Shown here one piece after another: positions 3,017 through 53,612 of a DNA stretch of 56,165 nt. Source of the DNA: Octopus bimaculoides. Lineage: Eukaryota. The notes beneath the pieces were generated by a model. It worked only from the letters and a program-made list of their open reading frames with translations. It did no database searches and was not told the DNA's origin. How positions within the stretch are numbered: the first letter of the stretch is position 1; each line of letters starts with the position of its first letter. A program made the translations under genes and the position numbers. The stretch is from assembly GCF_001194135.2 (NCBI RefSeq), contig NC_068989.1, forward strand, positions 74,822,129 through 74,878,293, read 5' to 3'.

Positions 3017-5008
3017 ATGGGAAATTTTCTTCCATTTTTCATAGTCATATTTTCGCTTCCATATTTGGTATCTCAAACGAAAGTTTACAATAAACGATCG
3101 CGTTGGAGATGTCCCCCAGCTTTATGCGTTGAAAATACCAGTAAAAACATTTATCGTTGTTCGTGTCGTCCGGACTGCTACCTCTACAGTGAATGCTGTT
3201 CTAATAGGATTAATAAGACCGCTTCTGACCACAAACAACCCTATCCTTCAATATATTACAGTTGTAGAAAGGTTGATCTCTCTTATTATTATCAATTTGA
3301 CCGTTGTCCACCTAACCATGATGTTACAGAGTATGTAAACAACTGTGAAAACCCTGACTCAGATGATCAAATGCAGTCCATTCCTGCTTTTGGTAAAACA
3401 AGTAAAAAACTCTACAGGAACTTATATTGCGCTCTCTGTCATGGAGAAGAATTCATTCTTTGGAATCTTTTATATAAATGCTCTTTCATCTCTAACATGA
3501 GCTTCGAAAATATATCCAGTTATGTCAAAGAGGGAAAATGTAGGCCAACTGTGGAGCTTCCTTCAGAAGATTTGAAGAAATATTTGTATTCCTGTGTTTC
3601 ATACATTTCGGATTGTCCTCAGGATAACCTTAATAGAAAACAAAGATTTAAATGTGAGTCTAAACCCATGGCATTAGTAACAGATCGAGTTAATATATTC
3701 AGGAACGTTTATTGTGCTACTTGCAATGGGATAAAAAAAGACAAAATCAAAAATCATTGCAAGCATGTACCAGAACGAAGGGTTAAATCACGGAAAATGT
3801 CTTTAACTATACTTTTTAACTACCATAGCAGTTCACTGGTAGTGACAGACAACCAGCTTAAGGAAGTTTCTGTTGTGCAGTTACCCTCCTGTCTGACACA
3901 TGCTCTGTATGATATGAATACCAATCAATGTCGACAAGTTATCTACCATCCTCAACTAAATTGTACGACAACCACATTAAATGAATCTGAGTATTACATC
4001 ACAAGTGATGGTCGTCTCTACTTAAATAATACCCAACGTTTACTGAACCAATCAGAATACACTCGTGATTCTCAAGGTATAATAAGTATCTGTGTAAAGA
4101 ATAATACCACTTTCATGCCAAAGTATTCTACTGCTGAACATTATATCACATATGTGGGATTAATTATCTCTATTCCGGCTTTAGCAATCACTATCATAGC
4201 CTACCTTTGTATACCTGATCTTCGTACCTTACCAGGTAAATTACTCATTAGTCTTTTATCAGCATTGCTTGTAGCTGAGCTACTCTTTCTTATTTCATTT
4301 CAAATAACACCATCTACAGTGCTGTGTATATCTTCAGCAGTTGTCATGCATTATTCCTTTCTTGCGACTTTCTTCTGGATGAATATCATATCATGTGATA
4401 CCTGGTACACTTTCTCAGGACTTACACAAATTCGAAATATAGGGAAAGGTACTAAGAGACTTGTCTTGTATTCCTTGTACGCTTGGGTCTGTCCACTTGT
4501 ATTAGTAACAGTATCACTGATATTTGAGTACATACCAAGAAGACATGAACTTTCTCCAGGATATGGAAATGGTACTTGCTGGATTACAAACAGAAAAAGT
4601 CTGCAGTGGCTCTTTGCAATACCCGTACTAATTATATTATGCCTTAATTTCATTGCATTTATCCTCACTGCTAGAGGAATCTATTTGACTGGTAAACTTT
4701 CTTCGAAATATTTGTCAAAACATAATAAAGACGAATTCATTGCTTGCATAAAACTATTCTTTATCATGGGACTTACATGGATATCTGCGTTTCTATATAC
4801 GTTTACAAGTATTGAAGAATTTTCTCTGTTATTTTGTATTTTGAACTCATTCGTTGGATTATTTATCTGTATATCATTTCTATCAACAAAGACTGTTCGT
4901 CGCAGTATTCTTCGGAATTTGCATAAAATTACAAAATTCTCCACAAAAGAGCCTATTGTTTCTTCCACTGAACAATCAATGGATATATCAACAAAAGCGT
5001 CTGATTAA
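3017..5008 (+). CDS. Class B-type (Methuselah-like/SMB-domain) 7TM GPCR, copy 1, 663 aa, single coding exon
   Basis: Signal peptide, CSCRPDCYLYSECC (somatomedin-B-like), two RNxYCAxC motifs, then 7 hydrophobic helices with LRTLPGK (ICL1), HYSFLATFFWM (TM3), YAW (TM4), GTCWI (ECL2) and KLFFIMGLTW (TM6). Most divergent copy. Confidence 0.95.
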   Translation: MGNFLPFFIVIFSLPYLVSQTKVYNKRSRWRCPPALCVENTSKNIYRCSCRPDCYLYSECCSNRINKTASDHKQPYPSIYYSCRKVDLSYYYQFDRCPPNHDVTEYVNNCENPDSDDQMQSIPAFGKTSKKLYRNLYCALCHGEEFILWNLLYKCSFISNMSFENISSYVKEGKCRPTVELPSEDLKKYLYSCVSYISDCPQDNLNRKQRFKCESKPMALVTDRVNIFRNVYCATCNGIKKDKIKNHCKHVPERRVKSRKMSLTILFNYHSSSLVVTDNQLKEVSVVQLPSCLTHALYDMNTNQCRQVIYHPQLNCTTTTLNESEYYITSDGRLYLNNTQRLLNQSEYTRDSQGIISICVKNNTTFMPKYSTAEHYITYVGLIISIPALAITIIAYLCIPDLRTLPGKLLISLLSALLVAELLFLISFQITPSTVLCISSAVVMHYSFLATFFWMNIISCDTWYTFSGLTQIRNIGKGTKRLVLYSLYAWVCPLVLVTVSLIFEYIPRRHELSPGYGNGTCWITNRKSLQWLFAIPVLIILCLNFIAFILTARGIYLTGKLSSKYLSKHNKDEFIACIKLFFIMGLTWISAFLYTFTSIEEFSLLFCILNSFVGLFICISFLSTKTVRRSILRNLHKITKFSTKEPIVSSTEQSMDISTKASD

Positions 5009-11599: not shown

Positions 11600-14170
11600 G
11601 CCTGGGGTGACGGTGTTTCTCCCACTGTCTTCAGTGCTTGACATTTTTATAGAGAATCGGAGACCACACCCGTTCACCGTCCAGGTAGAGTTAAAGATGC
11701 CTCAGCCTCAGTGCATGCCTGTGCATCATTAGCCACGGCATCCCTATCCCACCCTTTGACGGTTGTTGGGAGCAAATAGAGCGCCTTACAAGAGGTCCTT
11801 TTCCCTTCCACAAAAAGCGGAAGAGCAATCGTTCCAACTTGTTTAGCCGCGAATAGGGGCAAGGCACGACGGTTAGGCGGTAAATGATCCCCGATGCGAT
11901 AAACACATCTGCGACGTCCCCACTCCATTTTAGGGATAACCACCGTTCAAACCAGGTCTGGATTAGATGAGTCCCCCTGCTCATAACCTCACTCCACTTC
12001 TCCATCTGGAGGTCTAGCATTTTAACCGGACCGTCCGTCCAACGTCCCACGACACTGTTGGGCGGCATCGACTTACCCCTCCAGGTGCCTAGATGCAAGC
12101 CGAATGACTTATCCCGGTTAATTTTTGCTCCTGTCGCCGCTTCGTAATACTTAATAGCCTCGCTTACTCTCTGTAGGTGTTTCACGATGATGGCGACGTC
12201 GTCTGCATACGCCGTAACCGACCTCCCACAAACTAGATAACGCAGTAAAGGCTCCAGAGCCAACGCATACAGAAGGAGGAAGAGGGGACATCCTTAACGC
12301 ACCGAACGCTTGATGCAGAACGGTTTCAAATATAAACCGTTCACCCGAACGATCGAATTGATGTTGCTATATAAAGCAATAATCCACGGACGGAAGACCG
12401 GGCTAAACTTGATGGCTTTTTTGAGGGCATACAACCATTTGTTGTTAATAATGGATCTGGTTAATGTCCTCATTACTAACTGCCTAATCCGGCTCCTGTA
12501 CTCCTCACAAGCCAAAAGTGGCTTGTTAAGTTTCCTGTAGCCGGGACGCTGTCTACATAACCTATCTAAATCAAGTCTACAGGTCACAAACTTGTGATCA
12601 CTGTAGCTGACGTAGTGGGATCGTGGACGCCTGATTAATTCTTTGTCTTTAATCCTAACTATAATCCTATCTAAGTAAGATCTAGAAGACCCATCGCTAT
12701 TAGACCATGTCCACAATGGAGCGTCCGGGAATTCAAGTCTGTATCGATCTACCAGCTAAAAACAACTGAGCAGATCGCTGAGGCAAGGGTTTCCCCTCCT
12801 ATTGGGATTCGAGCCAACACAATCTACGCGTGCATTGCAAATTGTGTTAAAGTTTCCTACCACCACTATAGTGTGCAACGTTCCTAGAGAATTCTCTAGA
12901 CTTCTGAAATAGTCAGACTGCCTAGCTCCACAAGGAGCATAGACAGCCACCAGTCTGAAGGTCTTACCACTGCTGTGTCAAGGACGACCAACCTGCCCTC
13001 TGGGTCAACAAAGATTGTTCTTATCTCTATCGACAGATTTTTGCCGAGTAGAACCGCGACGCCTCTCCCGCCAGGTTGGCATAGAGAAATAAATTTCTTG
13101 TAGCCATTGAAGAGGGGTGAAAAATCTCGCATTCCACTCAATCTGGTTTCTGTAGTGACATCTATTTCCAACCTATGCGACCTCAGATCATTAAGGAGGC
13201 ATCCTTGCTTCTAATCGACACCAGTCCCCGTACACTTACACATCCTACATTAAGAGAGGACAAAAAAATCTTCCCTTAATGGAGGAGAGTTGAACCCTCC
13301 TCTTTGTCTGTGGGCTGTGAAGCCACCTCAATGAATTGGTGGTAGAGTGATTGGGTGATCTTTTTCCTCAGAGTACCTACGTATTCCGGGAATGATATTT
13401 TTAGTTTATGATGCTGTTCTCGACTGATGAAGATAAATTTAACGTTTTTTGGGACATCCTTTTTTGGACAGCTGATATGATATACTTCTCTTTTACGCTT
13501 TGTATTTCTGGTGTTATATGCCATAATAAGACCTGTTTTGTGGGAAGGGGTTGGGGAGTTTGGGTATCATGTGTGCTTGCCTTTGTGAATTTTTCTGTGG
13601 GGGAAGGGATGGGATTAGTGTCTGGGATGGTAGGAGGGGTTGGTGTCTATGGGGACAGGGTGGGGATCAGTGTCTATGGGGATAGGAAGGGGACTAGTGT
13701 CTGTGGGGGCAGGATAGGGAGACTTTCTTTTTTCTTAGACACTATCGTTCACTCACTGTCTGACGATTTCTCCTGGGCTTCTTTTCTTTTCATTAAAGTA
13801 TTTTCTTCTGTGCTCTTCATAACTTCGTAGGTGTCGTGGACGGTGGGGGCGCGGCTGCTTTCACGACTGGTGGGGGCTCTGGAGTTTTAGGTAGAGGACA
13901 CTCTGCTTTTATATGTCCTTTCAGGCCACATTTAAAACAACGCATCTTTCTGCCTTCCATCATAACTCTCAACTGTGTTTCCTCTCCCACCAATATGGTG
14001 ACGGCAATCTTCTTAAGGTCTTCAGGGGCAGCTTGGATTAGTATTTCTAAACCTTGCCCCAGCCAATTTTGTTGGTTGACTTTCGTTGCTTGGAGGATTG
14101 TTATCTTCTCCTCCAAGCCTAAAATGATAGCGGCTACAAGCCAGGAAACGTCGACCTCTGGTGGCCTCTG
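11600..14170 (-). mobile_element. Decayed L1/Tx1-clade LINE (ORF1 gag zinc knuckle, ORF2 APE and partial RT)
   Basis: CFKCGLKGHIKAEC (CX2CX4HX4C). APE motifs ETR, GVAVLL, DPEGRLVVLD, AVYAP, VGNFN, WTWSN...YLDRI, SDHKFV. RT motifs YADDV, KINRDKS. Frameshifts and a large deletion between APE and RT. Confidence 0.9.
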
Positions 14171-14842
14171 ATATGAAATTTGCTCGTCGCTTCTTCTCCG
14201 TAACCAGACCGATCCATTTCTCGACCGTATTGTAACTTGCGATGACAAGTGTATTCTGTACAATAATAGAAACATTCTCCGCATTGGTTGGACCAAACTA
14301 AAGCACTGAAAACCTTCCCTAAACCCGAGCTCTTCAAAAAGAAGGTTATGGTGACTGTTTGGTGCTGTACTACTGGATTCAACCACTATAATTTCTTAAA
14401 ACCCAGAAAAACCATTACCCCAGAAATATATCGCCATGAAGTTGCCAAAATGAACGAAAAACTGCTAATTCTCCGTCCCAGACTGGTCAACAGAAGAGGG
14501 TCAATCATTCTTCATGACCATGCTCGGTCACATGTCTCAATAATGATGCTCGACCCAGCTTATTCCCCAGACCTTTCTGCTACCGAATACTACTTTTTCA
14601 AGCTCCTTGATAGTCTCCTGCGAGAAGAGTTCAAAAATCAAACCTATGCTGAAAGTACGTTCAAAACGTTAATCAGCTCCAGAACTCCAGATGTTACCGG
14701 AATAAACAAACTTGTAACTCGTTGGTAAAAATTCGTTGATTGTAATGGTACTTACATTGATGAATAAAATTTCTGCATTATTGATATATATTTTGTTGAA
14801 TCTCATGTTTCAGCACGTTGTTTTCTTTTTAGTCAGTCTGAT
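14170..14842 (+). mobile_element. Mariner (Hsmar1/cecropia-like) transposase 3' part with TIR-like end
   Basis: FLDRIVTCDDKCILYNN, KKVMVTVW, LHDHARSH, AYSPDLSATEYYFF; ends ttttagtcagtctgata|ta. Confidence 0.9.
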
Positions 14843-21010: not shown

Positions 21011-22829
21011 TGAATTTTAAAAAGGTGTCTTCGACGGCAATTTTGTTGAAGGCTCCTATGCGTTTCTAAATAATTGATGTTGCTACAAAACAATAAATAT
21101 TCAATTTGACATCACTCAACAGCAAATAAATTTAATATTCCAAAATACATTTAGAACATTTTACTGACATGTTTTCATCACAAAACATTCAGAAAGCACG
21201 TTGCCCCATTTTACTAACAGTCCCATACCATATATTCAATCAGAGGCTGTGTGCATATGCATTACATGCATTTTAAAAACATTTTTTGTTTTCCCAGTTG
21301 GCCTTAACACTATCACCTTTCATCATATATTCGGATGAGAAGGTATCAATTTTTGTTCAGTTTCAACTTCTCTGGGAAAGCTACCTCAAACTATTTGACC
21401 ATGTTTCTCGATTTGCTGAGTTAGAACCTGCTTACTATGTTCTCTTTACTGAGGATCCTGCTAGATTCACGGATTGTGTTGATCTACCTCAAGCTACAGG
21501 GTCACTGCAACTGAGGAGGTATTTTGCGGAGATGGTACGCAACTTGCAAGCTCAGGGGAGCGGTTATCGTCACAGATCCGGTGCAATAGAAAATGACAAG
21601 AAGTATCTATGGTCAACAAAATACAGCACGCTAGGGAGAGAGTCGTTTACAACACTCCAATTAGATATCAAGAGAAATAGGATATATTAACAGCATATAT
21701 CCACTTAAGGAAACAGATGTCTAGTAAAGTCCAAACTTGAAGGTTGTTAGGTCTCAGGAAGTGATCAGACGTAAACTATTTTCTCTCTACATAAAAAGGT
21801 GTAAACGTTTAACATTTCTTAATAGTTATAATATGCAGAATATTTCAAATTATATATATATATCATAGATTGTGACATTTGAAAGTAAACTACAAATAAA
21901 TATCATCGGATAGAACATTAATTTGTATAATACATCACTAATGATTACATTCTATGAGCTTTGGATCTCTGGTCTTTCCTGTCCTTCACTATATTTGTGA
22001 CATTTGGACTGTCCGGAACCTTGAGGAGCCGCTTTGAACTCCTTTGATACTAGGATGATCAACAGGATGATGTGTTATCATTGGTCCGATTTTGTATCCA
22101 ACCAACGACTCTACTAACAAAACGGGATCTGTCATGTTACTTGTATGATTCGGAAGCGCTAGCGCAGTCTGTGTGGTCATGTTTCTTGAATATCTGAGTT
22201 AAACTTTGCTTAACATGTTCTCTTCACTAAAGGCCCGGCTTGGATGACAGCTCGTGTTGATCAGCCACATGCTAAGGGCCGCTGCAGATGCGGAGGTGCT
22301 TCGTGGAGGTGGATACTAACTGGTGCTCAACTCGACTAGTTAACCGGGTGGTCCCGGGAATATACCAACAAATGGTGAATGTAGCAAAATGCTGCAACGG
22401 CGCACTTCCCCACATCTGACTTCACCTGCATATAATGCATACGTGTGCTTGCTTGTGTGACTGAATTGGAATGGGTGCCTACAGTTGTGCCTGTGCTTAT
22501 GATAACGTGTGTAATTATATACTTTTTTATTTTACAGATACATGTATCATCTTCGAATATAGAGCTCCAGTTAGAAATGAAAATATTTCATTGCTGGCAA
22601 TTTCGTATTGTTTCCATCACAAGTGAGCTGAAATACAAGGGTTACTAATAGTACTCCTGAATGTGGCCAACGTGTAGAAACAATTGTGGAAACCGAAAGA
22701 TGATTACTTTCTATCATTCAGGTAACAGTCAAATTTCGAAAATACATATCAGGTCTTTTGCTTGAATTCATTTAGAGTATCACTACGACTTAAAGATCGA
22801 TTATTACATTGTCGATTATATCTTTTTAA

Positions 22830-24861
22830 ATGGCAGCATTTATTCAGTTGTGCGTTCTTCCTCTCCTACTTTACTCAAAAATTGTATCGCATGCACGAGA
22901 CTTCGACAACTGTATCCCAGCTTTGTGTTCTTTTTCTACCGAACTTGGAGTAGCTAAACGTTGTTCGTGTCGCTCGGGTTGCTACCTCTACAATGAATGT
23001 TGTTCTGATATGATTAATGACACCACCTCTAATCAGAAACAACCCTATCCATCAATATATTACAGTTGTAGAGAAGTCGGAGACTCTTATGTTCATTACA
23101 CTTATTATTATCAATTTGACCGTTGTCCACCTAACCATGATGTTACGGAGTATATCAACAACTGTGAAAATCCTGACGCAGATGATCAACTGCAATCCAT
23201 TCCTGCTTTTTGTAAAACAAGTAAAAAACTATATAGGAACCTATATTGCGCTCTCTGTCATGGAGAGGAATTCATTCTTTGGAATCTTTCATATAACTGC
23301 TATTCCATTTTTAATATAAGCTTCGAAAATATATCCAGTTATGTCAAAGAGGGAACATGTAAACCAACTGTGAAGCTTCCTTAAGAAGATTTGGAGAAAT
23401 ATTTGTTTTCCTGTATTCCATATATTTCGAATTGTCCTCAAGATAACAATAATACGAAAGAAAGAACTGCATGTGAATCTGGGGCCATATCCTTAATATA
23501 TTTACCTGAGAAAAATTCTTGTGTATATGCTGAATATGCATTTATTAAGATTTACAAAAACAGAGGTTGTGCCAAATGCAACGGGGTTTCTCAAATTCCG
23601 TGTATAGTGTCCTGTGTGGAAATGTTACCACATTTAAGATCTCCATCACTAACAATCCTTTTCAATTATCATACAAATTCCATAAAGGTAAGAGAAGAAA
23701 TCAGCGGAACGGAACATACACTTGTACAGTTGCCCTCCTGTCCAAAACACGCAGTCTACGATATGAATACTAAGGAATGTCGGCAAGTTATCTACCATCC
23801 TCAGCTAAACTGTACGACAACAAGATTAAATGAATCTGAGTATTATATCACTAGTGATGGTCGTCTCTACTTAAATAATACCCAACGTTTGATGAACCAA
23901 TCAGAATTCACTCGTGATTCTCAAGGTATAATAAGTATCTGTGTAAACAATGGTACCAATAATATATCAAATATACATGGCATATCAAAATATTCCGTAG
24001 CTGAGAGCTATATTACATTAGTGGGACTAGTGATCTCTATTCCAGCTCTAGCAATCACTATTTTAGTCTATCTCTGTATACCTGATCTCCGTACCTTACC
24101 AGGTAAATTACTAATTAGTCTTTTATTAGCATTGTTTGTAGCTGAGCTTCTCTTTCTTATCTCATCACAAGTCACTGTATCTACAATGCTGTGTAAATCT
24201 TTAGCTGTGATGTTGCATTATTATTTTCTAGCGACTTTCTTCTGGATGAATGTCATGTCTTTTGATGCCTGGAACACTTTCTCAGGACTTACACAACTTC
24301 GAAGTAAAGGGAAAAATACCAAGAGACTTGTCTTGTATTCCTTATATGCTTGGACCTGTCCATTTGTAATAGTAACTGTTTCACTGATATTTGAGTACAC
24401 ACCTGGAAATCATGGACTTTCTCCAGAATATGGAAATGGTACCTGCTGGATTGGAAATGGAAAAAGTCTTTTGTGGCACTTTGCAATCCCCGTAATGATT
24501 ATTTTATGTCTTAATATAATAGCATTTATTCTTATCACTTTCTTCAAAATATTTATCGAAACATAACAAAAATGAATTTGTTATTCACTTAAAACTATTC
24601 TTTATCATGGGTCTAACATGGACATTTGCATTTCTGTATACGTTTACAAGAATTGAAGAATTTTCTCTGTTATTTTGTATTTTAAACTCATTCGTTGGAT
24701 TATTTATTTGTGTATCGTTTCTATCAACAAAGACAGTTCGTCACAATATTCTTAGTAATTTGCACAAAATTGCAAAATTGCCTACAAAAGAATTTACTGA
24801 TGTTTCTTCTGCTCCTAAAACAATATCAATGGCTGTATCTACTGAAGGCTCAGCTAATTAA
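22830..24861 (+). pseudogene. GPCR copy 2, disabled by one nonsense codon and one 26-nt frameshift deletion
   Basis: CCT TAA GAA GAT TTG at 23379-23393, where copies 1 and 4 have CCT TCA GAA GAT TT(G/A). After ATC ACT (24539) the paralog segment AGA GGG CTC TAT TTG GCA AGT AAA CT is missing. The rest is collinear to the shared stop at 24859-24861. Confidence 0.93.
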
Positions 24862-29164: not shown

Positions 29165-31675
29165 TGAGTGAATAATGTGTATATGCACACACACACATAC
29201 ACACATGCACACATACATACACAAACGCGCGCGCACACTCATACATGAAGAATTTAAGTGGGGTACTCCAGACTTTTTCAATTAATCACTTATATAATAC
29301 TAATTGTGTATAGATAACACAATATTTCACACTTGGATGCATAGATTTTCATGAAATTAGTTCATTATATACAAATGGGTGCATCGTAACACACTCTGTT
29401 TGCTTATCATTAACGACTGTTTTACGCACCTGGTAACCTACATCCACCTAATTATGTTAATATCTTGCTAATTGTTCATCTTTTGATTTTGATGCAAATG
29501 TTTTAAGCTGTATTCTATGTAATTTTCTAGTTTTCTCGGTGATGTCGATTTTTTGTGTGTTAATTTATATTAAATATCGGTCCAATAGATTAGTCGTGTT
29601 TGAACAGATACACTCTGTTGACGTTTGCGAGAATAAAAATGAAGACATAGAAGGCGAAGTCTTAATGCAATGAACAAAGAACGAAGAAATCACAACGTCT
29701 ACGTATTCAAGTTGTTGGACACCAGTGTTTTTGTTTAAGTATAAATACAAATATTATGATTTTATAAGAATTAATAAGAAAAATGAGGATCAGAACGTCC
29801 CTGCCATTGACGGTAATATGAGATAAGGTAAGATCGTAGTTACGTTTTTCCTAATTCTTTCTCCGTCACAGTCTATCCAGCGATTCTGTTTTATAGTGAG
29901 GCTTACTCTAGATATACCTTCCTATTTATCAACTGTACACCTATCTTTCCCAAGAGTTCTGACTAAGATCGCTGCTACTATATTAAGCTTTCTTAGTTGA
30001 AGACATTTTAACATATATGATATTTTGTTATCAAGCCATTAACCATTACCTTTAATTCTATAATATAGTGTTTATATATAATTACTATACACCTGTTTTA
30101 TCATTTAATCAATATATAATCTAGTGGTTGTATTTTTTATATCTTATACATATACGGAGTCCAAATCTAATATTTTCTCTAATATCCCATGTTATAATTG
30201 CTACATTTTGTACTTTGAATAGTAGGTAGAAATAAAAGCATTAGAGTATCTTTTGTGAAGTACCAGTCTCTAAGTTATTAGTGAATAAGCAATTAAATAC
30301 TTGCCCATTAGATTGAAACTCTACTATTCAGCAAGTTACAAATATTCAATTTCATACATACGTATATATATATAACAATGAGACCTACTGATCAGAACTA
30401 AGGAAAACATCTCAAAGTTCGAAATCACGTAATATAGGTATACCTGTGATCCTTATTTGCGACTTTCAGCTGCAATGTTGAGTTAAATTTTGCTCGTCCC
30501 TGGATTTTCGTCAGCCTGTTGTACTTTCAGCGAAATTCTGGCTTATTTTGAGTATTTTTCGACTCTTATTTCTAGCATCAATTGTCGGCTGTCCTTCTAC
30601 TCCTTATTTCGAGCATTCAAATGACACGTTGATTATCTAGAGGAAAGATTTACTACAGTGTATAGAGAAGTTTAAACATATGGAAATTATAACATAACGA
30701 GAAACATGCAAATGAATATTGCGAATGATATTGCACGCACCTTGCAAACATGGGATAGCGGATACCGTTTTAGATTCGGTATAATGGACAAAGATGAGAA
30801 GCAGTATATGTATGTGCTGCCACAGGCAACATGCTACTGAAGCAGTTATTAACAAGAATCCAGTTGAATTTCATGAGTTATTGGGTTTAGGATAATTTTA
30901 CAGCATATGTCCACTCAGTGAAACAGAAGTCTTATGATGTTGAAAGCTGAAGGTTGTAACGTTTATGAAAGTGATCACAGATTAACTATTTTTTCTCTAC
31001 GCCTAAAAAAGGAGTATACGTATAACATTTCTTAAAATTTATAAGAAAAGGATATTTTCGAATGAGACTAACAATACATTGTGATATCTAATAGTAATCT
31101 ACAACTGAACATCATTGATATATTATATATTTACTAGGGATGAACTTTGATTAGTAGTATAAATAACCATGATTTAAATTGAGAACTGTATCTATCATTT
31201 GTGTTTGTATATGTATATGTGTGTGGGGGGGGGGTGTTCATATATGGGTGTTTGCGTTTACAATAATATGTATAATTATATATTTCTTCTTTTACAGACA
31301 CGCTTACTATCTCCCGATATATATACAGACTGTCTCGTGACCGAAGTGCAAGCATTGATAATTTACAATCAGTATAATCAGAAGACCTGCTTAAACCTAA
31401 AGCAGATAGTCGGGGATTGTTAAATGGTGACGATTTCGTATTAATAACTTAACAAGAAATCTGAAATAAGGGAGTCGCTAACTGTATTGATGCATGTTTC
31501 TAAATTGTATAAATCTGGAAACTGAAAAGCAATTTCGTTCTATGATTAACATAATACTTATATAAAATTTCAAAATACATATCAGGATATTAAATTTACG
31601 GCAATAAAATAAATTACCAAAATATCACCAAGATTTGATGGCTCAATTATTACTTTGTTAATTATATTTTTAAAA
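29165..31675 (+). repeat. Paralogous upstream block of GPCR copy 3
   Basis: Matches 17050-17800/19497-19660, 37030-38510 and 47065-47335; 30900-31120 matches 21690-21920. Confidence 0.8.
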
Positions 31676-33714
31676 TGGGAACTTTTATTCAATCGTTTAT
31701 AATTTTACTTCTACTGCTTTCAAATGTTATATCACATACAACATACTTCAACAATTGTAGCCCAGCTTTGTGTTCTGTTACTCCCACACCTGGCATACCT
31801 AAACGTTGTTCGTGTCACCAATACTGCTACCTCTACAGTGAATGTTGTTCTGACATTATTAATAAGACTACTTTTTATCACAAACAACCCTATCCATCAA
31901 CATATTATAGTTGTAAAGACGTTAATGGCTCGTATTATTATCAAATTGATCGTTGTCCACCTAACCATGATGTTATGGAGTATGTAAACTACTGCGAAAA
32001 TCCTGTCTCGGATGATCAACTACAAAACATACCTGCTTTTGGTAAAACAAGTAAAATGCTCTACAGGAACCTTTATTGCGCTCTGTGTCATGAAGAGGAA
32101 TTCATTCTTTGGAATCTTTTATATAAATGTGAATTCAGGCCTAATGTAAGCTTTGAAGATATTACAAGTTATGTCAAGAATAGATGCCAGTTAACTCTAA
32201 AACTGCCTTCAGTAGATTTGGGGAAATATTTGTATTCCTGTAATCGATATATTTCGAACTGTCCTCATGGTAACAATAACACGGAACAAAGAATTGCATG
32301 CGAATTTCAGCCCATGGCGTTAATATATTTAGATAAGGAAGAATATTTTATACATACCAAATATAGACATTTTAAGTTTTACAAAAACCGAGGTTGCGCC
32401 ACATGCAACGGGGTTTCTGAAGTTCCATGTAAAGTATCCTATCCTAAGGATAACTTGAAAGTTTTACCTACAGCTTTAACAGTCCTTTTCAATTATCATA
32501 CAAATTCCATAAAAGTAACTGATAAGTCCACTGAAAAGAAACATACACTTGTGAAGTTGCCCTCCTGTCCAAAACATGCTGTCTACGATATGAATACTAA
32601 CAAATGCAGACAAGTTATCTACCATCATCAACTAAACTGTACGACAACGAGTTTAAATGAATCCGAGTATTACATCACTAACGATGGTCGTCTCTACTTA
32701 AATAATACCCAACGTTTGATGAACCAATCAGAATTCATTCGTAATTCACAAGGTATAATAAGTATCTGTGTAAACAATGGTACCAATGATATATCAAATA
32801 TCAATGGTTTATCAAAATATTCCGTAGCTGAGAGCTATATCACATTAGTGGGACTCGTGATCTCTATTCCAGCCCTAGCAATCACCATTATAGTCTATCT
32901 CTGTATACCTGATCTCCGTACCTTACCAGGTAAATTACTCATCAGTGTCTTGTCAGCACTGTTTGTTGCTGAGCTTCTCTTTCTTATCTCATCACAAGTC
33001 ACTACATCTACAGTGTTGTGTAAATCTTTAGCTGTGGTGTTGCATTATTCGTTTCTAGCGACTTTCTTCTGGATGAATGTCATGTCATTTGATGCTTGGT
33101 ACACTTTCTCAGGATTTATACAACTTCAAAGAAAAGGAAAAGGCACCAAGAGGCTTGTATTGTATTCCTTGTATGCTTGGATCTGTCCACTTGTAATAGT
33201 AACTATTTCACTGATATTTGAGTACACACCTGGAAATCATGGACTTTCTCCAGACTATGGAAATGGTATTTGCTGGATTACAAACGGAAAAAGTCTGCTA
33301 TGGTTTTTTGCAATCCCCGTAATGGTAATTTTATGCCTTAATATCATAGCATTTATCCTCACCATCAGAGGGCTCTATTTGGCAAGTAAACTTTCTTCAA
33401 AATTTTTATCAGAACATAATAAACAGGAGTTCATCATTTCCATAAAACTATTCCTTGTCATGGGACTTACATGGACATTCGCTTTTTTGTATACATTTAC
33501 AAAAATTGACGAACTTTCTCTGTTATTTTGTATATTAAACTCATTCGTTGGACTATTTATTTGTTTATCGTTTCTATCAACAAAGATTGTTCGTCGGAGC
33601 ATTTTTCGTAATTGGCACAAAATTACAAAATTGTTGACAAAAGAATTTACCGATGTTTCTTCTGTTTCTGAAACAATATCAATGGATATATCTACTAAAA
33701 GTTCGGGTAATTAA
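31675..33714 (+). CDS. Class B-type (Methuselah-like/SMB-domain) 7TM GPCR, copy 3, 679 aa
   Basis: Intact ORF with signal peptide, RCSCHQYCYLYSECC, RNLYCALCH, KNRGCATCNG and a 7TM region collinear with the other copies. Confidence 0.96.
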   Translation: MGTFIQSFIILLLLLSNVISHTTYFNNCSPALCSVTPTPGIPKRCSCHQYCYLYSECCSDIINKTTFYHKQPYPSTYYSCKDVNGSYYYQIDRCPPNHDVMEYVNYCENPVSDDQLQNIPAFGKTSKMLYRNLYCALCHEEEFILWNLLYKCEFRPNVSFEDITSYVKNRCQLTLKLPSVDLGKYLYSCNRYISNCPHGNNNTEQRIACEFQPMALIYLDKEEYFIHTKYRHFKFYKNRGCATCNGVSEVPCKVSYPKDNLKVLPTALTVLFNYHTNSIKVTDKSTEKKHTLVKLPSCPKHAVYDMNTNKCRQVIYHHQLNCTTTSLNESEYYITNDGRLYLNNTQRLMNQSEFIRNSQGIISICVNNGTNDISNINGLSKYSVAESYITLVGLVISIPALAITIIVYLCIPDLRTLPGKLLISVLSALFVAELLFLISSQVTTSTVLCKSLAVVLHYSFLATFFWMNVMSFDAWYTFSGFIQLQRKGKGTKRLVLYSLYAWICPLVIVTISLIFEYTPGNHGLSPDYGNGICWITNGKSLLWFFAIPVMVILCLNIIAFILTIRGLYLASKLSSKFLSEHNKQEFIISIKLFLVMGLTWTFAFLYTFTKIDELSLLFCILNSFVGLFICLSFLSTKIVRRSIFRNWHKITKLLTKEFTDVSSVSETISMDISTKSSGN

Positions 33715-39520: not shown

Positions 39521-40158
39521 CTGTGGTAAATTATTGAATTTCCGATTTAGACACTGCTTACCATATTCTCTTCACTGAGGATCCTGCTGGGTTGACGGTT
39601 CATGTTGGTCAGCCACAAGCTACAGAGTCACTGAGGATGAGGAAGTATCTCACGGGGATGGAGACTGACTGGGACTTTACCCGACGGGTCATCCAGGAGG
39701 GCCCTTAAATATACCAACAAATGGTGAATGTAGTAAAATGCTGCAACGACGCAGCTCCCTCATCAAATCTCACCTGCATATACTGAATACATGTACGTGC
39801 TCGTGTGCCTGAATTAGCATGGGTGCCTACATATGTATCTGTCTTTACGATAATGTGTGTAATTATATACTTCTTATTTTACAGAAACCCGTATCATCTT
39901 CGAATATAGAGCTTCATTTAGGAATGAAAATATTTCGTATTGTTTCCATTACAAGAGAGCTGGAAAACAAGAGATATAAACTGTAATCCTGAATGACATT
40001 AACATTTAGAATGAAATGTGGAAACCGAAAGATAATTACTTTCTATCATTCAGGTAACAGTTAAACTTCAAAAATACATATCAGGTCTCTTGTTTGAATT
40101 AAAGTAACACCGGGAATTAAAGAGTCAGTTATTCCAATGTCAATTATATCTTTTAAAA

Positions 40159-42201
40159 ATGGAAACTTTTATTCTAATGTGCGTGCTTTTTCTTCTATTG
40201 TTCTTAAATATTGTATCACATGCCACAGAATTCAACAACTGTAGTCCAGGTTTGTGTTCTGATCCTCCTGTATATGACGTACCTGAACGTTGTTCGTGTC
40301 GCCCGGACTGCTACCTCTACAATGAATGTTGTTCGGACAAGATTAATAAAACCACTTCTGATCACAAACAACCCTATCCATCAATATATTATAGCTGTAG
40401 AAAGGTTAGCGGTTCTTATTATTATCAGTTTGACCATTGTCCACCTAACCATGATGTTACAGAGTATGTAAACAACTGTGAAAATCCTGACTCAGATGAC
40501 CAACTACAAAACATACCCGCTTTTGGTAAAACAAGCAAAAGATTATTTAGGAACCTATATTGTTCTCTCTGTCATGGAGAGGAATTCATTCTTTGGAATC
40601 TTTTATATGAATGCAATTTTATCCTTTCTCCAAGCATTGAAAATATATCAAATTACGTCAAGGATGGAATATGTGAACCAACTCTGAAGCTTCCTTCAGA
40701 AGATTTAGAGAAATATTTGTATTCCTGTATTCCATATATTTCGAATTGTCCTCAAGATAACACTAATATGGAACAAAGAATCACATGTGAATCCGAGGCC
40801 ATGGCATTAATATATTTAGATGAGGAAAAATATTTTATACATACCAAATATAAAGATTTTAACTTTTACAAAAACAGAGGTTGTGCCACATGCAACGGTG
40901 TTTTTGAAGTTCCGTGTGAATTATTTTATCCTATAATGCTCGGAAATCATGTTATTCCACCATTAACGATCCTTTTCAATTATCATACAAAATCCATAAA
41001 GATAACAGATAAACACATCGGAACGGAAGATACGCTTCTGCAGTTACCATCGTGTCCAAAACATGCTGTCTACGATATGAATACTAAGGAATGTCGGCAA
41101 GTTATCTACCATCATCAACTAAACTGTACAACAACAAGATTAAATGAATCTGAGTATTACATCACCAGTGATGGTCTTCTTTACTTAAATAATGCTCAAC
41201 GTTTTCTAAACCAATCAGAATTCACTCGTGATTCTCAAGGTATAATAAGTATCTGTGTAAACAATGGTACCAATAATATATCAAATATCAATGGTATATC
41301 AAAATATTCCGTAGCTGAGAGCTATATCACATTAGTGGGACTCGTAATCTCTATTCCAGCTCTAGCAATCACTATTATAGTCTACCTCTGTATTCCTGAT
41401 CTCCGTACTTTACCAGGTAAATTACTCATTAGTCTTTTGTCAGCACTGTTTGTAGCTGAGCTTCTTTTTCTTATCTCAACAAAAGTCACTACATCTACAG
41501 TGATGTGTATATCTTTAGCTATAGTGATACATTATTCGTTTCTAGCGACTTTCTTCTGGATGAATGTCATGTCATTTGATGCTTGGTACACTTTCTCAGG
41601 ACTCACACAGCTTCGGAGTAAAGGAAAAGGTACCAAGAGACTTGCATTATATTCTTTGTATGGCTGGATCTGTCCACTTGTAATAGTAACTATTTCACTG
41701 ATATTCGAGTACACACCTGGAAATCATGGACTTTCTCCAGAATATGGAAATGGTATATGCTGGATTAAAAATGGAAAAAGTCTGCTGTGGCTCTTTGCAA
41801 TTCCTGTAATGTTTATTTTATGTCTTAATTGCATAGCATTTATCCTCACCACTAGAGGGCTTTATATGGCTAGCAAATTTTCTTCAAAATATTTATCGAA
41901 ACATAGCAGAAATGAATTCTTTATTTGCCTAAAACTATATCTTGTTATGGGACTAACATGGACATTCGCATTCATGTATACATTTACCAGAATTGAAGAA
42001 TTTTCTCTATTATTTTGTATTTTAAACTCATTCGTTGGAGTATTTATTTGTGTATCGTTTCTATCAACAAAAATTGTTCGTCGCAGTATTCTTCGTAATT
42101 TTCGCAAAATTGCAAAATTGCCTACAAAAGAATTTACTGATGTTTCTTCTGCTCCTAAAACAATATCAATGGATATATCAACTGAAAAGTCAGTTAACTA
42201 A
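40159..42201 (+). CDS. Class B-type (Methuselah-like/SMB-domain) 7TM GPCR, copy 4, 680 aa
   Basis: Intact ORF with the same cysteine scaffold and 7TM motifs as the other copies. Confidence 0.96.
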   Translation: METFILMCVLFLLLFLNIVSHATEFNNCSPGLCSDPPVYDVPERCSCRPDCYLYNECCSDKINKTTSDHKQPYPSIYYSCRKVSGSYYYQFDHCPPNHDVTEYVNNCENPDSDDQLQNIPAFGKTSKRLFRNLYCSLCHGEEFILWNLLYECNFILSPSIENISNYVKDGICEPTLKLPSEDLEKYLYSCIPYISNCPQDNTNMEQRITCESEAMALIYLDEEKYFIHTKYKDFNFYKNRGCATCNGVFEVPCELFYPIMLGNHVIPPLTILFNYHTKSIKITDKHIGTEDTLLQLPSCPKHAVYDMNTKECRQVIYHHQLNCTTTRLNESEYYITSDGLLYLNNAQRFLNQSEFTRDSQGIISICVNNGTNNISNINGISKYSVAESYITLVGLVISIPALAITIIVYLCIPDLRTLPGKLLISLLSALFVAELLFLISTKVTTSTVMCISLAIVIHYSFLATFFWMNVMSFDAWYTFSGLTQLRSKGKGTKRLALYSLYGWICPLVIVTISLIFEYTPGNHGLSPEYGNGICWIKNGKSLLWLFAIPVMFILCLNCIAFILTTRGLYMASKFSSKYLSKHSRNEFFICLKLYLVMGLTWTFAFMYTFTRIEEFSLLFCILNSFVGVFICVSFLSTKIVRRSILRNFRKIAKLPTKEFTDVSSAPKTISMDISTEKSVN

Positions 42202-51467: not shown

Positions 51468-53612
51468 TCAAGGCTTTGTGGAAGGATTCGCAACAGTTTC
51501 TGGCCTTTCAAGTGACGATATTCCACACTGGTTAAATTCATACAAGTTTCGCGTAACGGCGGAGTTAACTGACAGACTATTTTGTGCATCCGTTGATTTT
51601 GTTTCACGAGCAGAAGACACATCAACAGAATTTTTTGCGGGCAATTTTATAATTATTTGCAAATTCCGCAGAATACTGCGACGAACAATCTTTGTTGATA
51701 GAAACGATACGCAAATAAATATTCCAACGAATGAATTTAAAATACAAAATAATAGAGAAAATTCTTCAATTCTTGTAAACGTATACAGAAATGCGAATGC
51801 CCATGTAAGTCCCATGATAAAGAATAGTTTTATGCAAATGATGAACTCATCTTTATTATGTTTTGACAAATATTTCGAAGAAAGTTTACCGCTCAAATAG
51901 AGCCCTCTAGCGGTAAGGATAAATGCTATTATATTAAGGCATATAATAAACATTACGGGGATTGCAAAAAGCCATAGCAGACTTTTTCCATTTGTAATCC
52001 AGCAAATACCATTTCCATATTCTGGAGAAAGTCCATGATTTCCAGGTGTGTACTCGAATATCAGTGAAATAGTTACTATTACAAGTGGACAGATCCAAGC
52101 ATATAAGGAATACAATACAAATCTCTTGGTATGTTTTTCTTTACTTCGAAGTTGTGTAAGTCCTGAGAAAGTGTGCCAGGCATCAAAAGACATGACATTC
52201 ATCCAGAAGAACGTCGCAAGAAAGGAATAATGCATCACCACAGCTAAAGATTTACACAGCACTGTAGATGTAGTGACTTGTGATGAGATAAGAAAGAGAA
52301 GCTCAGCTACAAACAGTGCTGACAAAAGACTAATGAGTAATTTACCTGGTAAGGTACGGAGATCAGGTATACACAGATAGACTATAATAGTGATTGCGAG
52401 AGCTGGAATAGAGATCACGAGTCCCACTAATGTGATATAGCCGTCAACTACGGAATATTTTGATATACCATTGATATTTGATATATTATTGGTACCATTA
52501 TTTACACACATATTTATTATACCTTGAGAATCACGAATGAATTCTGATTGGTTCAGCAAACGTTGGGTATTATTTAAGTAGAGACGACCATCACTGGTGA
52601 TGTAATACTCAGATTCATTTAATCTTGTTGTCGTACAGTTTAGTGGAGGATGGTAGATAACTTGCCGGCATTCCTTAGAATTCATATCGTAGACAGCATG
52701 TTCTGGACACGATGGTAACTGCAGAAGCGTATCTTCCGTTCCGAAGTATTTATCTGTTACCTTTATGGTTTTTGTATGATAATTGAAGAGGATTGTAAGT
52801 GGCTTAAATGAATCTAATGGAGGATATGTCATTCGGTATTCTACTTCACACGGAACTTCAAAAATCCCGTTACATGTAGCACAAGGTTTGTTTTTATATC
52901 GAATTAAATGTTCTTGGTTTAAGTTTTCGTATCGAATTAAATGTTCTTGATTTAAATATATCAACGCCATGGGCTCAGATTCACACGCCATTCTTTGTTC
53001 TGTATTGTTGTTATCTTGAGGACAATTCGAAATATATGGAATACAGGAATACAAATATTTCTTGAAATCCTCTGAAGGACGAAAATCTGTTGATCGACAT
53101 CTTCCATCCTTGACATTGGTTGATATACTATCAACGCTTAGATTAGAGATGCGATAGCATCTATATAAAAGATTCCAAAGAATGAATTCCTCTCCATGAC
53201 AGAGAGCGCAATATAGGTTCCTGTAGAGTCTTTTACTTGTTTTACCAAAAGCAGGAATGGACTGCACTTGATCATCTGAGTTAGAGTTTTCACAGTTGTT
53301 TACGTACTCTGTAACATCATGGTTAAGTGGACAACGGTCAAACTGATAATAATAATCATCACTAACCTTTCTACAACTATAATATATTGATGGATAGGGT
53401 TGTTTGTGGTCAGAAGTGGTTTTATTAATCTTGTCCGAACAGCATTCATTGTAGAGGTAGCAGTCCGGGTGACACGAACAACGTTTAGGTACGCCATGTG
53501 TGGCAGGATCAGAACACAAAGCTGGGCTACAGTTGTTGAAGAATTGTGCAAGTGATGCAACATTTGAAAAGATTATAAGAGAAAGCACAAGCAACTGAAA
53601 TGATGTTACCAT
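51468..53612 (-). CDS. Class B-type (Methuselah-like/SMB-domain) 7TM GPCR, copy 5, 714 aa, inverted orientation
   Basis: Intact ORF. The ATG at 53612 (ttttaaaATGG, the same context as the paralogs) is preferred over the track's TTG at 53633. Has a C-terminal extension and an internal 11-aa duplication. Confidence 0.95.
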   Translation of the reverse strand: MVTSFQLLVLSLIIFSNVASLAQFFNNCSPALCSDPATHGVPKRCSCHPDCYLYNECCSDKINKTTSDHKQPYPSIYYSCRKVSDDYYYQFDRCPLNHDVTEYVNNCENSNSDDQVQSIPAFGKTSKRLYRNLYCALCHGEEFILWNLLYRCYRISNLSVDSISTNVKDGRCRSTDFRPSEDFKKYLYSCIPYISNCPQDNNNTEQRMACESEPMALIYLNQEHLIRYENLNQEHLIRYKNKPCATCNGIFEVPCEVEYRMTYPPLDSFKPLTILFNYHTKTIKVTDKYFGTEDTLLQLPSCPEHAVYDMNSKECRQVIYHPPLNCTTTRLNESEYYITSDGRLYLNNTQRLLNQSEFIRDSQGIINMCVNNGTNNISNINGISKYSVVDGYITLVGLVISIPALAITIIVYLCIPDLRTLPGKLLISLLSALFVAELLFLISSQVTTSTVLCKSLAVVMHYSFLATFFWMNVMSFDAWHTFSGLTQLRSKEKHTKRFVLYSLYAWICPLVIVTISLIFEYTPGNHGLSPEYGNGICWITNGKSLLWLFAIPVMFIICLNIIAFILTARGLYLSGKLSSKYLSKHNKDEFIICIKLFFIMGLTWAFAFLYTFTRIEEFSLLFCILNSFVGIFICVSFLSTKIVRRSILRNLQIIIKLPAKNSVDVSSARETKSTDAQNSLSVNSAVTRNLYEFNQCGISSLERPETVANPSTKP

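What the first reader, a model, noticed from the sequence alone, without database searches (positions are those of the whole stretch)
32320..32480. Discrete hypervariable loops in the ectodomain against a near-invariant stalk and 7TM
Seen (copy 3 coordinates given): the loop between the cysteine after CA.CNG and LT.LFNYH differs completely between copies: KHVPERRVKSRKMS (1), IVSCVEMLPHLRSPS (2), KVSYPKDNLKVLPTA (3), ELFYPIMLGNHVIPP (4), EVEYRMTYPPLDSFKP (5). The loop before the second CxxC module, the loop after C-x-P-x-L-C and the loop after FILWNL also vary. In contrast, long stretches such as ISIPALAITI.VYLCIPDLRTLPGKLLIS are essentially identical in copies 2-5. Inference: diversifying selection on ligand-contact loops on a fixed disulfide scaffold, like variable immune or chemosensory receptors, with concerted evolution of the signalling half.
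Basis: partly seen in the sequence, partly recalled or inferred. Interest (0 to 1): 0.75.

Follow-up and report, generated by a model that had tools for sequence, protein, structure and literature searches.

The report
Hypervariable loop in octopus receptor genes
Five neighbouring octopus genes for Methuselah-like cell-surface receptors are nearly the same except for one 15-residue outside loop that changes faster than silent DNA sites, which suggests each copy recognises something different, although a local mutation hot spot is not excluded.

Summary
The window is Octopus (most likely O. bimaculoides) and carries five single-exon tandem paralogs of a class-B GPCR. This is the octopus-specific 'Methuselah-like' expansion already described by Ritschard et al. 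2019.

The 14-16-residue loop between CxxCNG..C and LTILFNYH is the least conserved 15-residue window of the protein (8% identity among copies 2-5). Between paralogs it is close to random even at the DNA level. Its length stays at 14-19 residues across the family.

In five ortholog pairs (O. bimaculoides vs O. sinensis or O. vulgaris) it is the only window where dN exceeds gene-wide dS. ML gives omega 2.6 with a shared synonymous rate (p=6e-7), or 2.2 without the pseudogene pair (p=3e-4). If the loop is given its own synonymous rate, omega=1.7 is not significantly above 1. Selection and a local hot spot therefore cannot be fully separated.

The other variable loops have omega near 1, which is relaxed constraint rather than diversification. 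The 'invariant' stalk-to-TM4 segment reflects purifying selection (omega 0.33) plus gene conversion, because paralog dS there equals ortholog dS. TM5-7 is not homogenised. Recombination breakpoints at the loop border move loops between copies.

This is a new detail in a known family. Interest is moderate.

The parts
3017..5008 (+). Copy 1: intact single-exon Mthl-type class-B GPCR gene (663 aa). It is the most divergent of the five.
   Evidence: ORF. Pfam 7tm_2 E=1.4e-29. O. sinensis ortholog at L002 10001.
3761..3802 (+). Hypervariable loop of copy 1 (KHVPERRVKSRKMS, strongly basic).
   Evidence: Ortholog pair 9 N / 1 S; ML omega 2.95, p=0.013.
22830..24861 (+). Copy 2: pseudogene in this assembly. 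It has an in-frame TAA at 23382-23384 and a 26-nt deletion after 24536 (TM5/ICL3).
   Evidence: The O. sinensis ortholog is intact at 677 aa.
23604..23648 (+). Hypervariable loop of copy 2 (IVSCVEMLPHLRSPS).
31675..33714 (+). Copy 3: intact gene (679 aa). Layout: signal peptide, SMB-like Cys knot, DUF8401 ectodomain with 24 Cys, N-glycosylated beta-rich stalk, 7TM, short tail.
32131..32199 (+). V2, the loop after FILWNL (copy 3). Relaxed, omega about 0.97.
32320..32376 (+). V3, the indel-rich loop before the second CxxC (copy 3). Omega about 1.1; pLDDT below 50.
32431..32475 (+). Hypervariable loop of copy 3 (KVSYPKDNLKVLPTA), the core of the finding.
   Evidence: AF2 pLDDT is below 50 for residues 254-263.
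32509..32544 (+). V5, the loop after LTILFNYH (copy 3). Omega about 1.07.
32668..33267 (+). Segment from the stalk end to TM4 of copy 3, homogenised among copies 2-5 by gene conversion and under purifying selection.
40159..42201 (+). Copy 4: intact gene (680 aa).
40918..40962 (+). Hypervariable loop of copy 4 (ELFYPIMLGNHVIPP).
51468..53612 (-). Copy 5: intact gene on the opposite strand (714 aa from ATG MVTSFQ), with a longer C-terminal tail.
   Evidence: P0002.
52800..52847 (-). Hypervariable loop of copy 5 (EVEYRMTYPPLDSFKP).
52890..52955 (-). 33-bp x2 tandem duplication inside V3 of copy 5 (NQEHLIRYE/NLNQEHLIRYK). It is absent from the O. sinensis ortholog.

Best explanation
The window holds part of an octopus-specific tandem array of intronless Methuselah-like (Mthl) class-B GPCR genes. 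The architecture is signal peptide, SMB-like cysteine knot, DUF8401 cysteine-rich ectodomain, glycosylated beta-rich stalk and a 7tm_2 domain.

The genes evolve as mosaics:
- A roughly 600-bp segment (end of stalk to TM4) is kept almost uniform among copies 2-5 by purifying selection together with inter-paralog gene conversion. This step is shown.
- TM5-7, the tail and the N-terminal cysteine module keep paralog-specific differences.
- Three or four ectodomain loops drift at about the neutral rate.
- One length-constrained loop of 14-17 residues, between the Cys that follows CxxCNG and the LTILFNYH strand, accumulates amino-acid replacements about 2-2.6 times faster than synonymous sites. The rate is shown; the cause is inferred.
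- Recombination with breakpoints at its 5' border sometimes swaps this loop between copies (shown for c6; the c7 replacement has no donor identified).

My reading (inferred) is that this loop is the paralog-specific recognition determinant of an otherwise shared signalling chassis, and that it is under diversifying selection. The array would then provide a repertoire of receptors with different ligand or partner specificities.
For: Identity and family:
- 7tm_2 E~1e-30 in all copies.
- The nearest homologs are all Octopus 'Mth/Mth2-like' proteins carrying PF28443 (DUF8401) plus 7tm_2.
- The family is described as octopus-specific group 4, tandemly duplicated, in PMC6408891.
- Somatomedin_B matches 7 of 27 members. 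SMB-bearing Mthl homologs are noted in PMC4768249.

Hypervariability:
-.
- Loop length is 14-19 residues, mostly 15, in about 20 distinct family members, with a weak xVxY...P frame.

Rate in five strict ortholog pairs:
- The loop has 47.5 N / 10.5 S changes, dN 0.323 and dS 0.245. The rest of the gene has dS 0.171 and omega 0.38.
- It is the only 15-codon window in about 700 codons with dN above gene-wide dS.
- MG94xHKY ML gives omega_loop 2.57; the LRT against 1 gives 2dlnL=24.9, p=6e-7.
- Without the c2 pair omega is 2.19, p=3e-4. Per pair: 2.95, 4.75, 1.03, 1.69, 3.30.
- The d3 pair shows 11 of 14 codons replaced, mostly by single first- or second-position changes, with only 1 synonymous change.
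- A sixth pair, at protein level: 10 of 14 residues differ in the loop against 57 of 394 elsewhere, p=4.5e-6.

Gene conversion:
- Quartet site patterns in columns 351-550 give orthology-supporting versus species-grouping counts of 1 vs 9 (c2-c5), 5 vs 8 (c3-c5) and 10 vs 5 (c2-c3). Outside that segment the counts are 131-159 vs 4-6.
- dS values are.

Cassette exchange:
- Os_c6 matches Ov_c6 in the 5' part but matches the broken Ov copy in the loop and 3' part. That broken copy itself switches from c7-like to c6-like exactly at CxxCNG.
- The c7 loop is replaced between two near-identical species.
Against: - When the loop is allowed its own synonymous rate, omega=1.74 and rho=1.45, and omega=1 cannot be rejected (p=0.22). 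The model 'omega=1, rate x2.3' fits almost as well (lnL -16998.76 against -16998.35).
- The within-loop NG86 N:S test is not significant (p=0.26).
- Copy 3's loop shows no excess (omega 1.0).
- The loop is predicted with pLDDT below 50, so it could be a floppy linker.
- A published codeml sites test on the whole family found no positively selected sites and a homogeneous omega of 0.306 (PMC6408891).
- Recombination in the array can mimic bursts of replacement, as in c6 and c7.
- No ligand, expression or polymorphism data were examined here.
- Only five DNA-level ortholog pairs were used, and one of them involves a pseudogene.
Confidence: 0.55

Rival explanations
1. Unconstrained surface linker plus a local mutational, indel or recombinational hot spot. 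The loop has no sequence requirement beyond its length. It diverges at or slightly above the neutral rate because of slippage, multi-nucleotide changes and short conversion tracts. The diversity has no adaptive meaning.
For: The ML model with omega=1 and a 2.3-fold local rate is statistically indistinguishable from the selection model. The neighbouring loops V2, V3 and V5 have omega of about 1. A 33-bp slippage duplication lies right next to the loop in c5. Loop replacement by recombination is seen in c6 and c7. AF2 confidence is low.
Against: Local synonymous divergence is not significantly raised (10 of 50 against 330 of 2155, p=0.33; rho=1 is not rejected, p=0.40). In c1 and d3 the changes are overwhelmingly single non-synonymous hits (9:1 and 13:1 N:S), which is not the pattern of random replacement. 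Loop length is held at about 15 residues while the adjacent V3 ranges from 0 to about 22 residues. The other relaxed loops, under the same genomic regime, stop at omega of about 1 and do not exceed it.
Confidence: 0.3
2. Age artefact. The paralogs are old. Everything except the loops has been repeatedly homogenised by gene conversion, and the loops simply preserve ancient, saturated, roughly neutral divergence because conversion tracts cannot cross them.
For: Gene conversion is demonstrably active in the array. The loops of c1, c3 and c5 are stable enough to be recognised between species at 85-87% nucleotide identity.
Against: Orthologous comparisons share one divergence time for all sites, and they still show the loop 2-fold faster than synonymous sites. 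Conversion is documented only for the stalk-to-TM4 segment. The Cys module, TM5-7 and 650 bp of upstream non-coding DNA give a consistent paralog distance of about 0.3-0.5 without conversion. Tracts would have to skip a 45-nt island flanked by conserved sequence on both sides in every copy, and that itself implies selection against homogenising the loop.
Confidence: 0.1
3. Artefact of assembly or annotation: collapsed or chimeric copies, sequencing errors, or pseudogenes drifting freely.
For: The window contains several N gaps. Copy 2 is broken. The O. vulgaris c3 has a homopolymer frameshift. Some public gene models are chimeric.
Against: Four of the five copies are intact ORFs of 663-714 aa. 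The same loops recur with recognisable orthologs in two or three independently assembled species. Omega in the rest of the gene is 0.2-0.5, as expected for functional genes.
Confidence: 0.03

Closest known systems
Octopus-specific 'group 4' Methuselah-like GPCR expansion (Ritschard et al. 2019, PMC6408891)
   Same: These are the same genes: class-B 7tm_2 receptors annotated Mth/Mth2-like, tandemly co-localised and octopus-specific. The paper reports expression of the octopus-specific expansions mainly in axial nerve cord, suckers and skin.
   Different: That study reported homogeneous purifying selection (omega 0.306) and no positively selected sites. It did not describe discrete hypervariable loops, gene conversion in the stalk-to-TM4 segment, or loop exchange by recombination. 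Here the loop-restricted ortholog analysis gives omega of about 2-2.6.
Ancient Mth/Mthl family outside arthropods (de Mendoza et al. 2016, PMC4768249); Drosophila Mthl1/5/14/15
   Same: Membership rests on the 7TM. The arthropod Methuselah_N ectodomain is absent. Some members carry Somatomedin_B domains. The history is one of lineage-specific expansions.
   Different: The octopus ectodomain is the uncharacterised DUF8401. The AF2 model of it has no significant match in the PDB. Hypervariability of one loop has not been described for Mthl receptors.
Adhesion GPCRs (ADGRL, ADGRG2, ADGRD1)
   Same: They are the closest solved 7TM domains by sequence (E~1e-18) and by fold (TM-score 0.7-0.8 on the target).
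   Different: No GAIN/GPS domain or HL|T cleavage motif was detected. The ectodomain is unrelated.
Tandemly arrayed recognition receptors with hypervariable binding loops and gene conversion (vertebrate V1R/V2R and taste receptors, MHC, KIR, plant NLRs)
   Same: Shared features are birth-and-death tandem arrays, purifying selection and conversion on the scaffold or signalling part, replacements concentrated in a few exposed loops, and frequent pseudogenes.
   Different: The protein family is unrelated. Here one short loop carries the signal, rather than a distributed binding surface. No ligand or polymorphism data exist, so the analogy is functional inference only.

Membership tests
Class B (secretin/adhesion) GPCR, Pfam 7tm_2 | Significant match of the seven-helix domain to PF00002 | tested here: met
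   E=1.4e-29 to 9.4e-32 over profile positions 5-250 of 250 in copies 1, 3, 4 and 5. All 27 of 27 family members match. AF2 gives 7 long helices.
Adhesion GPCR | GAIN domain with a GPS autoproteolysis motif immediately before TM1 | tested here: not met
   No GPS or GAIN Pfam hit at E<=0.1 in any of 27 members. The pre-TM1 sequence ...ICVNNGTNDISNINGLSKYSVAES... has no HL[ST] motif. The ectodomain model has no PDB match.
Adhesion GPCR | 7TM closest to aGPCR 7TMs | tested here: met
   The top PDB sequence hits are ADGRL2, ADGRG2, ADGRL3 and ADGRD1, E 1e-18 to 1e-16. The top Foldseek hits are the same group.
Methuselah sensu stricto (arthropod Mth) | Methuselah_N ectodomain (PF06652; 10 Cys, 5 disulfides) | tested here: not met
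   No PF06652 hit in 27 members. No structural match to any Mth ectodomain entry among the PDB hits. This agrees with PMC4768249, which finds that non-arthropod Mthl lack it.
Mth/Mthl gene family (7TM-defined clade) | Placement of the 7TM inside the Mth/Mthl clade in a phylogeny or by reciprocal best hits | not tested
   Taken from NCBI names and from the phylogeny of Ritschard et al. 2019. No tree with Drosophila Mthl was built here.
DUF8401-containing receptors (PF28443) | Match of the ectodomain to PF28443 | tested here: inconclusive
   The database's precomputed annotation lists PF28443 for the window's proteins and their homologs. The local Pfam copy returned no such hit, presumably because the model is newer than that copy.
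Receptor families under diversifying selection | dN/dS above 1 at specific exposed sites | tested here: inconclusive
   Omega_loop is 2.2-2.6 (p<=3e-4) if the synonymous rate is shared with the rest of the gene. It is 1.74 (p=0.22) with a loop-specific synonymous rate.
Receptor families under diversifying selection | Variable sites cluster on one exposed (ligand-binding) surface | not testable with these tools
The variable loops have pLDDT below 50.
Multigene family under concerted evolution | Paralogs within a species as close as or closer than orthologs at synonymous sites, with species-grouping site patterns | tested here: met
   This holds only for columns 351-550 (stalk end to TM4) of copies 2-5: paralog dS 0.14-0.26 against ortholog dS 0.12-0.22. 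It fails for the Cys module, for TM5-7 and for copy 1.

The most novel reading that the evidence does not exclude
The octopus-specific Mthl array is a diversified recognition repertoire, for example chemotactile, self/non-self or neuronal-identity receptors of arm, sucker and skin. In this reading a single 15-residue loop on a fold with no solved relative (DUF8401) sets specificity. The loop is driven by positive selection and is shuffled between genes as a cassette by recombination at the conserved CxxCNG border, while gene conversion keeps a common signalling core. This would be an invertebrate GPCR analogue of variable immune or chemosensory receptor systems.
Probability: 0.2. Interest if true: 0.7.

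Novelty: new member of a known kind. Interest (0 to 1): 0.45.

Why it matters
The octopus Mthl expansion is one of the few large octopus-specific gene family expansions. Its function is unknown. The only published selection analysis concluded that it is under uniform purifying selection.

Showing that replacements are concentrated in one short, length-constrained ectodomain loop evolving faster than silent sites gives a concrete, testable candidate for the specificity determinant of these orphan receptors. Loop-swap chimeras and deorphanisation screens could test it directly. It also suggests that the array diversifies recognition rather than only expression.

The analysis also shows that gene conversion and recombination are active in the array. 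Whole-family codeml analyses and public gene models of these genes should therefore be read with care.

Tried and rejected
- **Loop as a mini-intron.** Rejected. All copies are open and in frame, and there are no consistent GT..AG ends.
- **Compensated frameshifts behind the 'completely different' peptides.** Rejected. Gap-tolerant DNA alignments of the loops are no better than shuffled sequence.
- **Os_c6 vs Ov_c6 as an ortholog pair.** It gave loop omega 6.4. I dropped it because the Os loop matches a different, broken O. vulgaris copy, so the pair is a recombinant and not a substitution series. The same caution applies to c7.
- **Synonymous-site constraint or an RNA-level function behind the near-identical TM1 region.** Rejected. 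Ortholog dS there is normal at 0.12-0.22.
- **Foldseek of the full-length model.** It returned only 7TM hits. Foldseek of an ectodomain-only model gave no significant hit, best E=0.24, so the ectodomain fold stays unassigned.
- **Orthologs not found.** O. sinensis and O. vulgaris orthologs of copy 4, and an O. sinensis ortholog of copy 3, were not among the annotated proteins or the fetched loci. P0025 has no gene on record, so that pair could only be used at protein level.
- **Tree-based site models (M7/M8, FEL).** Not run. There is demonstrated recombination, and the paralog loops cannot be aligned.
- **Mapping variable sites on the model.** Not possible, because coordinates are not exposed.
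Full report
**What is in the window**

The window is AT-rich eukaryotic DNA (GC about 0.33) with microsatellites and N gaps. It carries five paralogous single-exon ORFs:
- copy 1 at 3017-5008 (+)
- copy 2 at 22830-24861 (+)
- copy 3 at 31675-33714 (+)
- copy 4 at 40159-42201 (+)
- copy 5 at 51468-53612 (-)

Copies 1, 3, 4 and 5 match Pfam 7tm_2 at E~1e-30.

A protein search found only Octopus proteins at high identity. They are named 'G-protein coupled receptor Mth/Mth2-like' and carry PF28443 (DUF8401) plus 7tm_2. The window's own products lie on the same 96.9-Mb contig as O. bimaculoides genes. Further copies flank the window on that chromosome (L007-L009). The array therefore spans at least about 160 kb with at least 12 copies.

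Copy 2 is a pseudogene here. It has a TAA at 23382-23384 and a 26-nt deletion after 24536. Its O. sinensis ortholog is intact.

**Checking the observation**

Among the five copies, amino-acid identity is 0.11 in the loop, against 0.71 overall and 0.82-0.83 in the stalk and 7TM. The lowest 15-residue windows of the whole protein all fall in this loop.

The DNA alignment shows about 45 nt with essentially no conserved columns, between the conserved motifs TGYGCNAnnTGYAAYGG and TTAACnATnCTTTTYAAYTAYCAT. Gap-tolerant alignments of the loops of different paralogs score like shuffled sequence. So the difference is not a frameshift artefact.

The loops are not introns, because all are open and in frame. 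For comparison, 650 bp of non-coding DNA upstream of copies 2 and 4 is still 77% identical.

Loop length is nevertheless held at 14-19 residues (mostly 15) in about 20 distinct family members, with a weak xVxY...P frame.

**Is the loop evolving faster than neutral?**

Paralog comparisons are saturated in the loop, so I used orthologs, where every site shares one divergence time. I fetched O. sinensis and O. vulgaris loci and built codon alignments. The strict ortholog pairs are c1, c2, c3, c5 and d3 (L009 10001 against L010 9200).

Pooled NG86 results:
- The loop has 47.5 non-synonymous and 10.5 synonymous changes, giving dN 0.323 and dS 0.245.
- The rest of the gene has dS 0.171 and omega 0.38.
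- In an unbiased 15-codon scan over about 700 codons, the loop is the only place where dN exceeds gene-wide dS, by up to 2.0-fold.
- Loop N changes per site against rest-of-gene S changes per site give an odds ratio of 2.0, p=2e-4.

I then fitted an MG94xHKY (F3x4) likelihood model with one branch length per pair:

| Partition | omega |
|---|---|
| HV loop, synonymous rate shared with the rest of the gene | 2.57 (LRT vs 1: 2dlnL=24.9, p=6e-7) |
| HV loop, c2 pseudogene pair left out | 2.19 (p=3e-4) |
| N-terminal region including V1 (columns 1-70) | 0.67 |
| V2 | 0.97 |
| V3 | 1.10 |
| V5 | 1.07 |
| Stalk | 0.33 |
| 7TM | 0.33 |

Per-pair loop omega values are 2.95, 4.75, 1.03, 1.69 and 3.30. 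In d3 and c1 almost every codon carries a single first- or second-position change. That is the pattern of serial point replacement, not of a swapped cassette.

A sixth pair (P0008 and P0025) was available only as protein. It has 10 of 14 loop residues different, against 57 of 394 elsewhere.

The caveat is statistical. If the loop is allowed its own synonymous rate, the best fit is omega 1.74 and rho 1.45, and neither omega=1 (p=0.22) nor rho=1 (p=0.40) can be rejected. 'Neutral but 2.3-fold faster' fits almost as well as 'omega 2.6'.

**The 'invariant' half**

Sliding-window distances show mosaic nearest neighbours. For example, copy 5 is closer to copy 4 or copy 1 than to its own ortholog in several windows, while in the loop region the ortholog is always nearest.

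Quartet site patterns make this quantitative. In alignment columns 351-550 (end of stalk to TM4; copy 3 coordinates 32668-33267), orthology-supporting against species-grouping sites are 1 vs 9 (c2-c5), 5 vs 8 (c3-c5) and 10 vs 5 (c2-c3). Outside that segment the counts are 131-159 vs 4-6.

Synonymous distances agree:

| Segment | Ortholog dS | Within-species paralog dS (c2-c5) | Cross-species non-ortholog dS |
|---|---|---|---|
| Stalk end to TM4 (cols 351-550) | 0.12-0.22 | 0.14-0.26 | 0.17-0.27 |
| Cys module (cols 51-160) | 0.12-0.31 | 0.31-0.49 | 0.28-0.47 |
| TM5-7 (cols 551-655) | 0.06-0.18 | 0.24-0.54 | 0.28-0.59 |

Ortholog dS in the stalk-to-TM4 segment is normal, so the uniformity is not due to synonymous constraint. 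It is due to gene conversion around and after speciation, on top of purifying selection. Copy 1 does not take part. So 'concerted evolution of the signalling half' is correct for a central segment of about 600 bp only.

**Recombination moves loops**

O. sinensis c6 is 0-4% different from O. vulgaris c6 in the 5' 800 nt, but differs at 17 of 42 loop positions. Its loop and 3' part instead match a second, broken O. vulgaris copy. That copy is itself c7-like up to the CxxCNG motif and c6-like after it.

The c7 loop is likewise replaced between these two nearly identical species, with identical flanks. No donor copy was found for it in the loci held.

At least one loop has therefore moved between copies by recombination at the conserved 5' border. 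Such pairs must be excluded from dN/dS, and I excluded them. This also warns that whole-family site models are confounded.

**What the protein is**

AF2 models were built for the full-length protein (pLDDT 72) and for the ectodomain alone (pLDDT 70, pTM 0.64). They give:
- a mixed alpha/beta cysteine-rich module
- a beta-rich stalk with many NxS/T sites
- seven helices
- pLDDT below 50 for the HV loop (residues 254-263) and for V3 (residues 222-232)

The 7TM is closest to adhesion GPCRs by sequence and by fold. No GAIN, GPS or Methuselah_N domain is detected in 27 family members.

The ectodomain model has no significant PDB match. The N-terminal eight-cysteine segment is Somatomedin-B-like. 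The match is weak in copy 3, but 7 of 27 members match, with a best E of 1.5e-6.

This fits the published picture of ancient, non-arthropod Mthl receptors, which lack the Mth ectodomain and sometimes carry SMB domains (PMC4768249).

**Comparison with what is known**

The family is the 'octopus-specific group 4' Methuselah-like expansion of Ritschard et al. 2019 (PMC6408891). That paper describes 45 sequences, tandem co-localisation, a homogeneous omega of 0.306 and no BEB-supported sites. It reports expression of the octopus-specific expansions mainly in axial nerve cord, suckers and skin.

The gene family and its tandem expansion are therefore already known. I did not find the following in two literature searches:
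- the discrete length-constrained hypervariable loop
- its faster-than-synonymous rate in orthologs
- the conversion-homogenised stalk-to-TM4 segment
- loop exchange by recombination

The general pattern is a conserved or converted scaffold with a hypervariable recognition loop in a birth-and-death tandem array. That pattern is familiar from chemosensory and immune receptor families.

**Verdict**

- One loop shows a rate excess consistent with diversifying selection, with a neutral hot spot not excluded.
- The other loops are merely relaxed.
- Concerted evolution applies to a sub-segment only.
- Surface clustering of variable sites could not be tested.

I rate it a new member of a known kind, of moderate interest.

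Noticed in passing
window 22830-24861 (+); stop at 23382-23384; deletion junction after 24536: Copy 2 is a pseudogene in this assembly (in-frame TAA and a 26-nt deletion in TM5/ICL3). The O. sinensis ortholog (L002 38453-40486) is an intact 677-aa ORF.
   Followed up: yes
window 52890-52955 (-), inside copy 5: A 33-bp x2 tandem duplication in the V3 loop (NQEHLIRYE/NLNQEHLIRYK). It is absent from the O. sinensis and O. vulgaris orthologs, so it is a recent slippage event right next to the hypervariable loop.
   Followed up: partly
window 31756-31914 (copy 3 residues 28-80): The N-terminal eight-cysteine segment looks like a Somatomedin-B domain. The Pfam match is weak in copy 3 (E=0.086) but is found in 7 of 27 family members, best E=1.5e-6.
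   Followed up: partly
window 22183-22829 and 39531-40157: About 650 bp immediately upstream of copies 2 and 4 is 77% identical. This may be a shared promoter or 5'UTR carried along with the duplication.
   Followed up: no
window 13817-14386 (-), in the GC-rich island at about 12-14 kb: An ORF with a CCHC zinc knuckle (Pfam E=1.4e-4) sits in a locally GC-rich stretch (0.46 against about 0.33). It is probably a retroelement gag fragment between copies 1 and 2.
   Followed up: no
L002 10001-40486 (O. sinensis): The public gene model P0006 ('Mth-like 12 isoform X2') splices the 5' half of the c1 ortholog to the 3' half of the c2 ortholog across 30 kb, although both loci are complete single-exon ORFs. 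It is probably a chimeric annotation.
   Followed up: partly
L003 about 11360-11395 (O. vulgaris c3 ortholog): A one-base insertion in a T run truncates the annotated protein (P0007, 472 aa). It is either a homopolymer assembly error or a recent pseudogene.
   Followed up: partly
L006 57582-59447 (O. vulgaris): A broken chimeric copy. It is c7-like in the 5' part, switches at the CxxCNG motif to c6-like sequence, and carries the loop type found in O. sinensis c6.
   Followed up: yes
L009 19106-21089 and L010 12937-14865: In one paralog lineage, about 40 residues between the loop and LNCxTT are replaced by unrelated sequence (…RKYNPPDRSKLQEFLLASLFALKNEEMLNKITQVS…). The replacement is conserved between O. 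bimaculoides and O. sinensis. It could be a frameshifted or inserted segment.
   Followed up: no
window about 8.2-8.7, 14.8-15.7, 27.7-28.5, 35.1-35.7 and 45.6-46.4 kb: Runs of N (assembly gaps) lie between the gene copies and are flanked by TA, TG or CA microsatellites. Inter-copy distances in the window are therefore uncertain.
   Followed up: no
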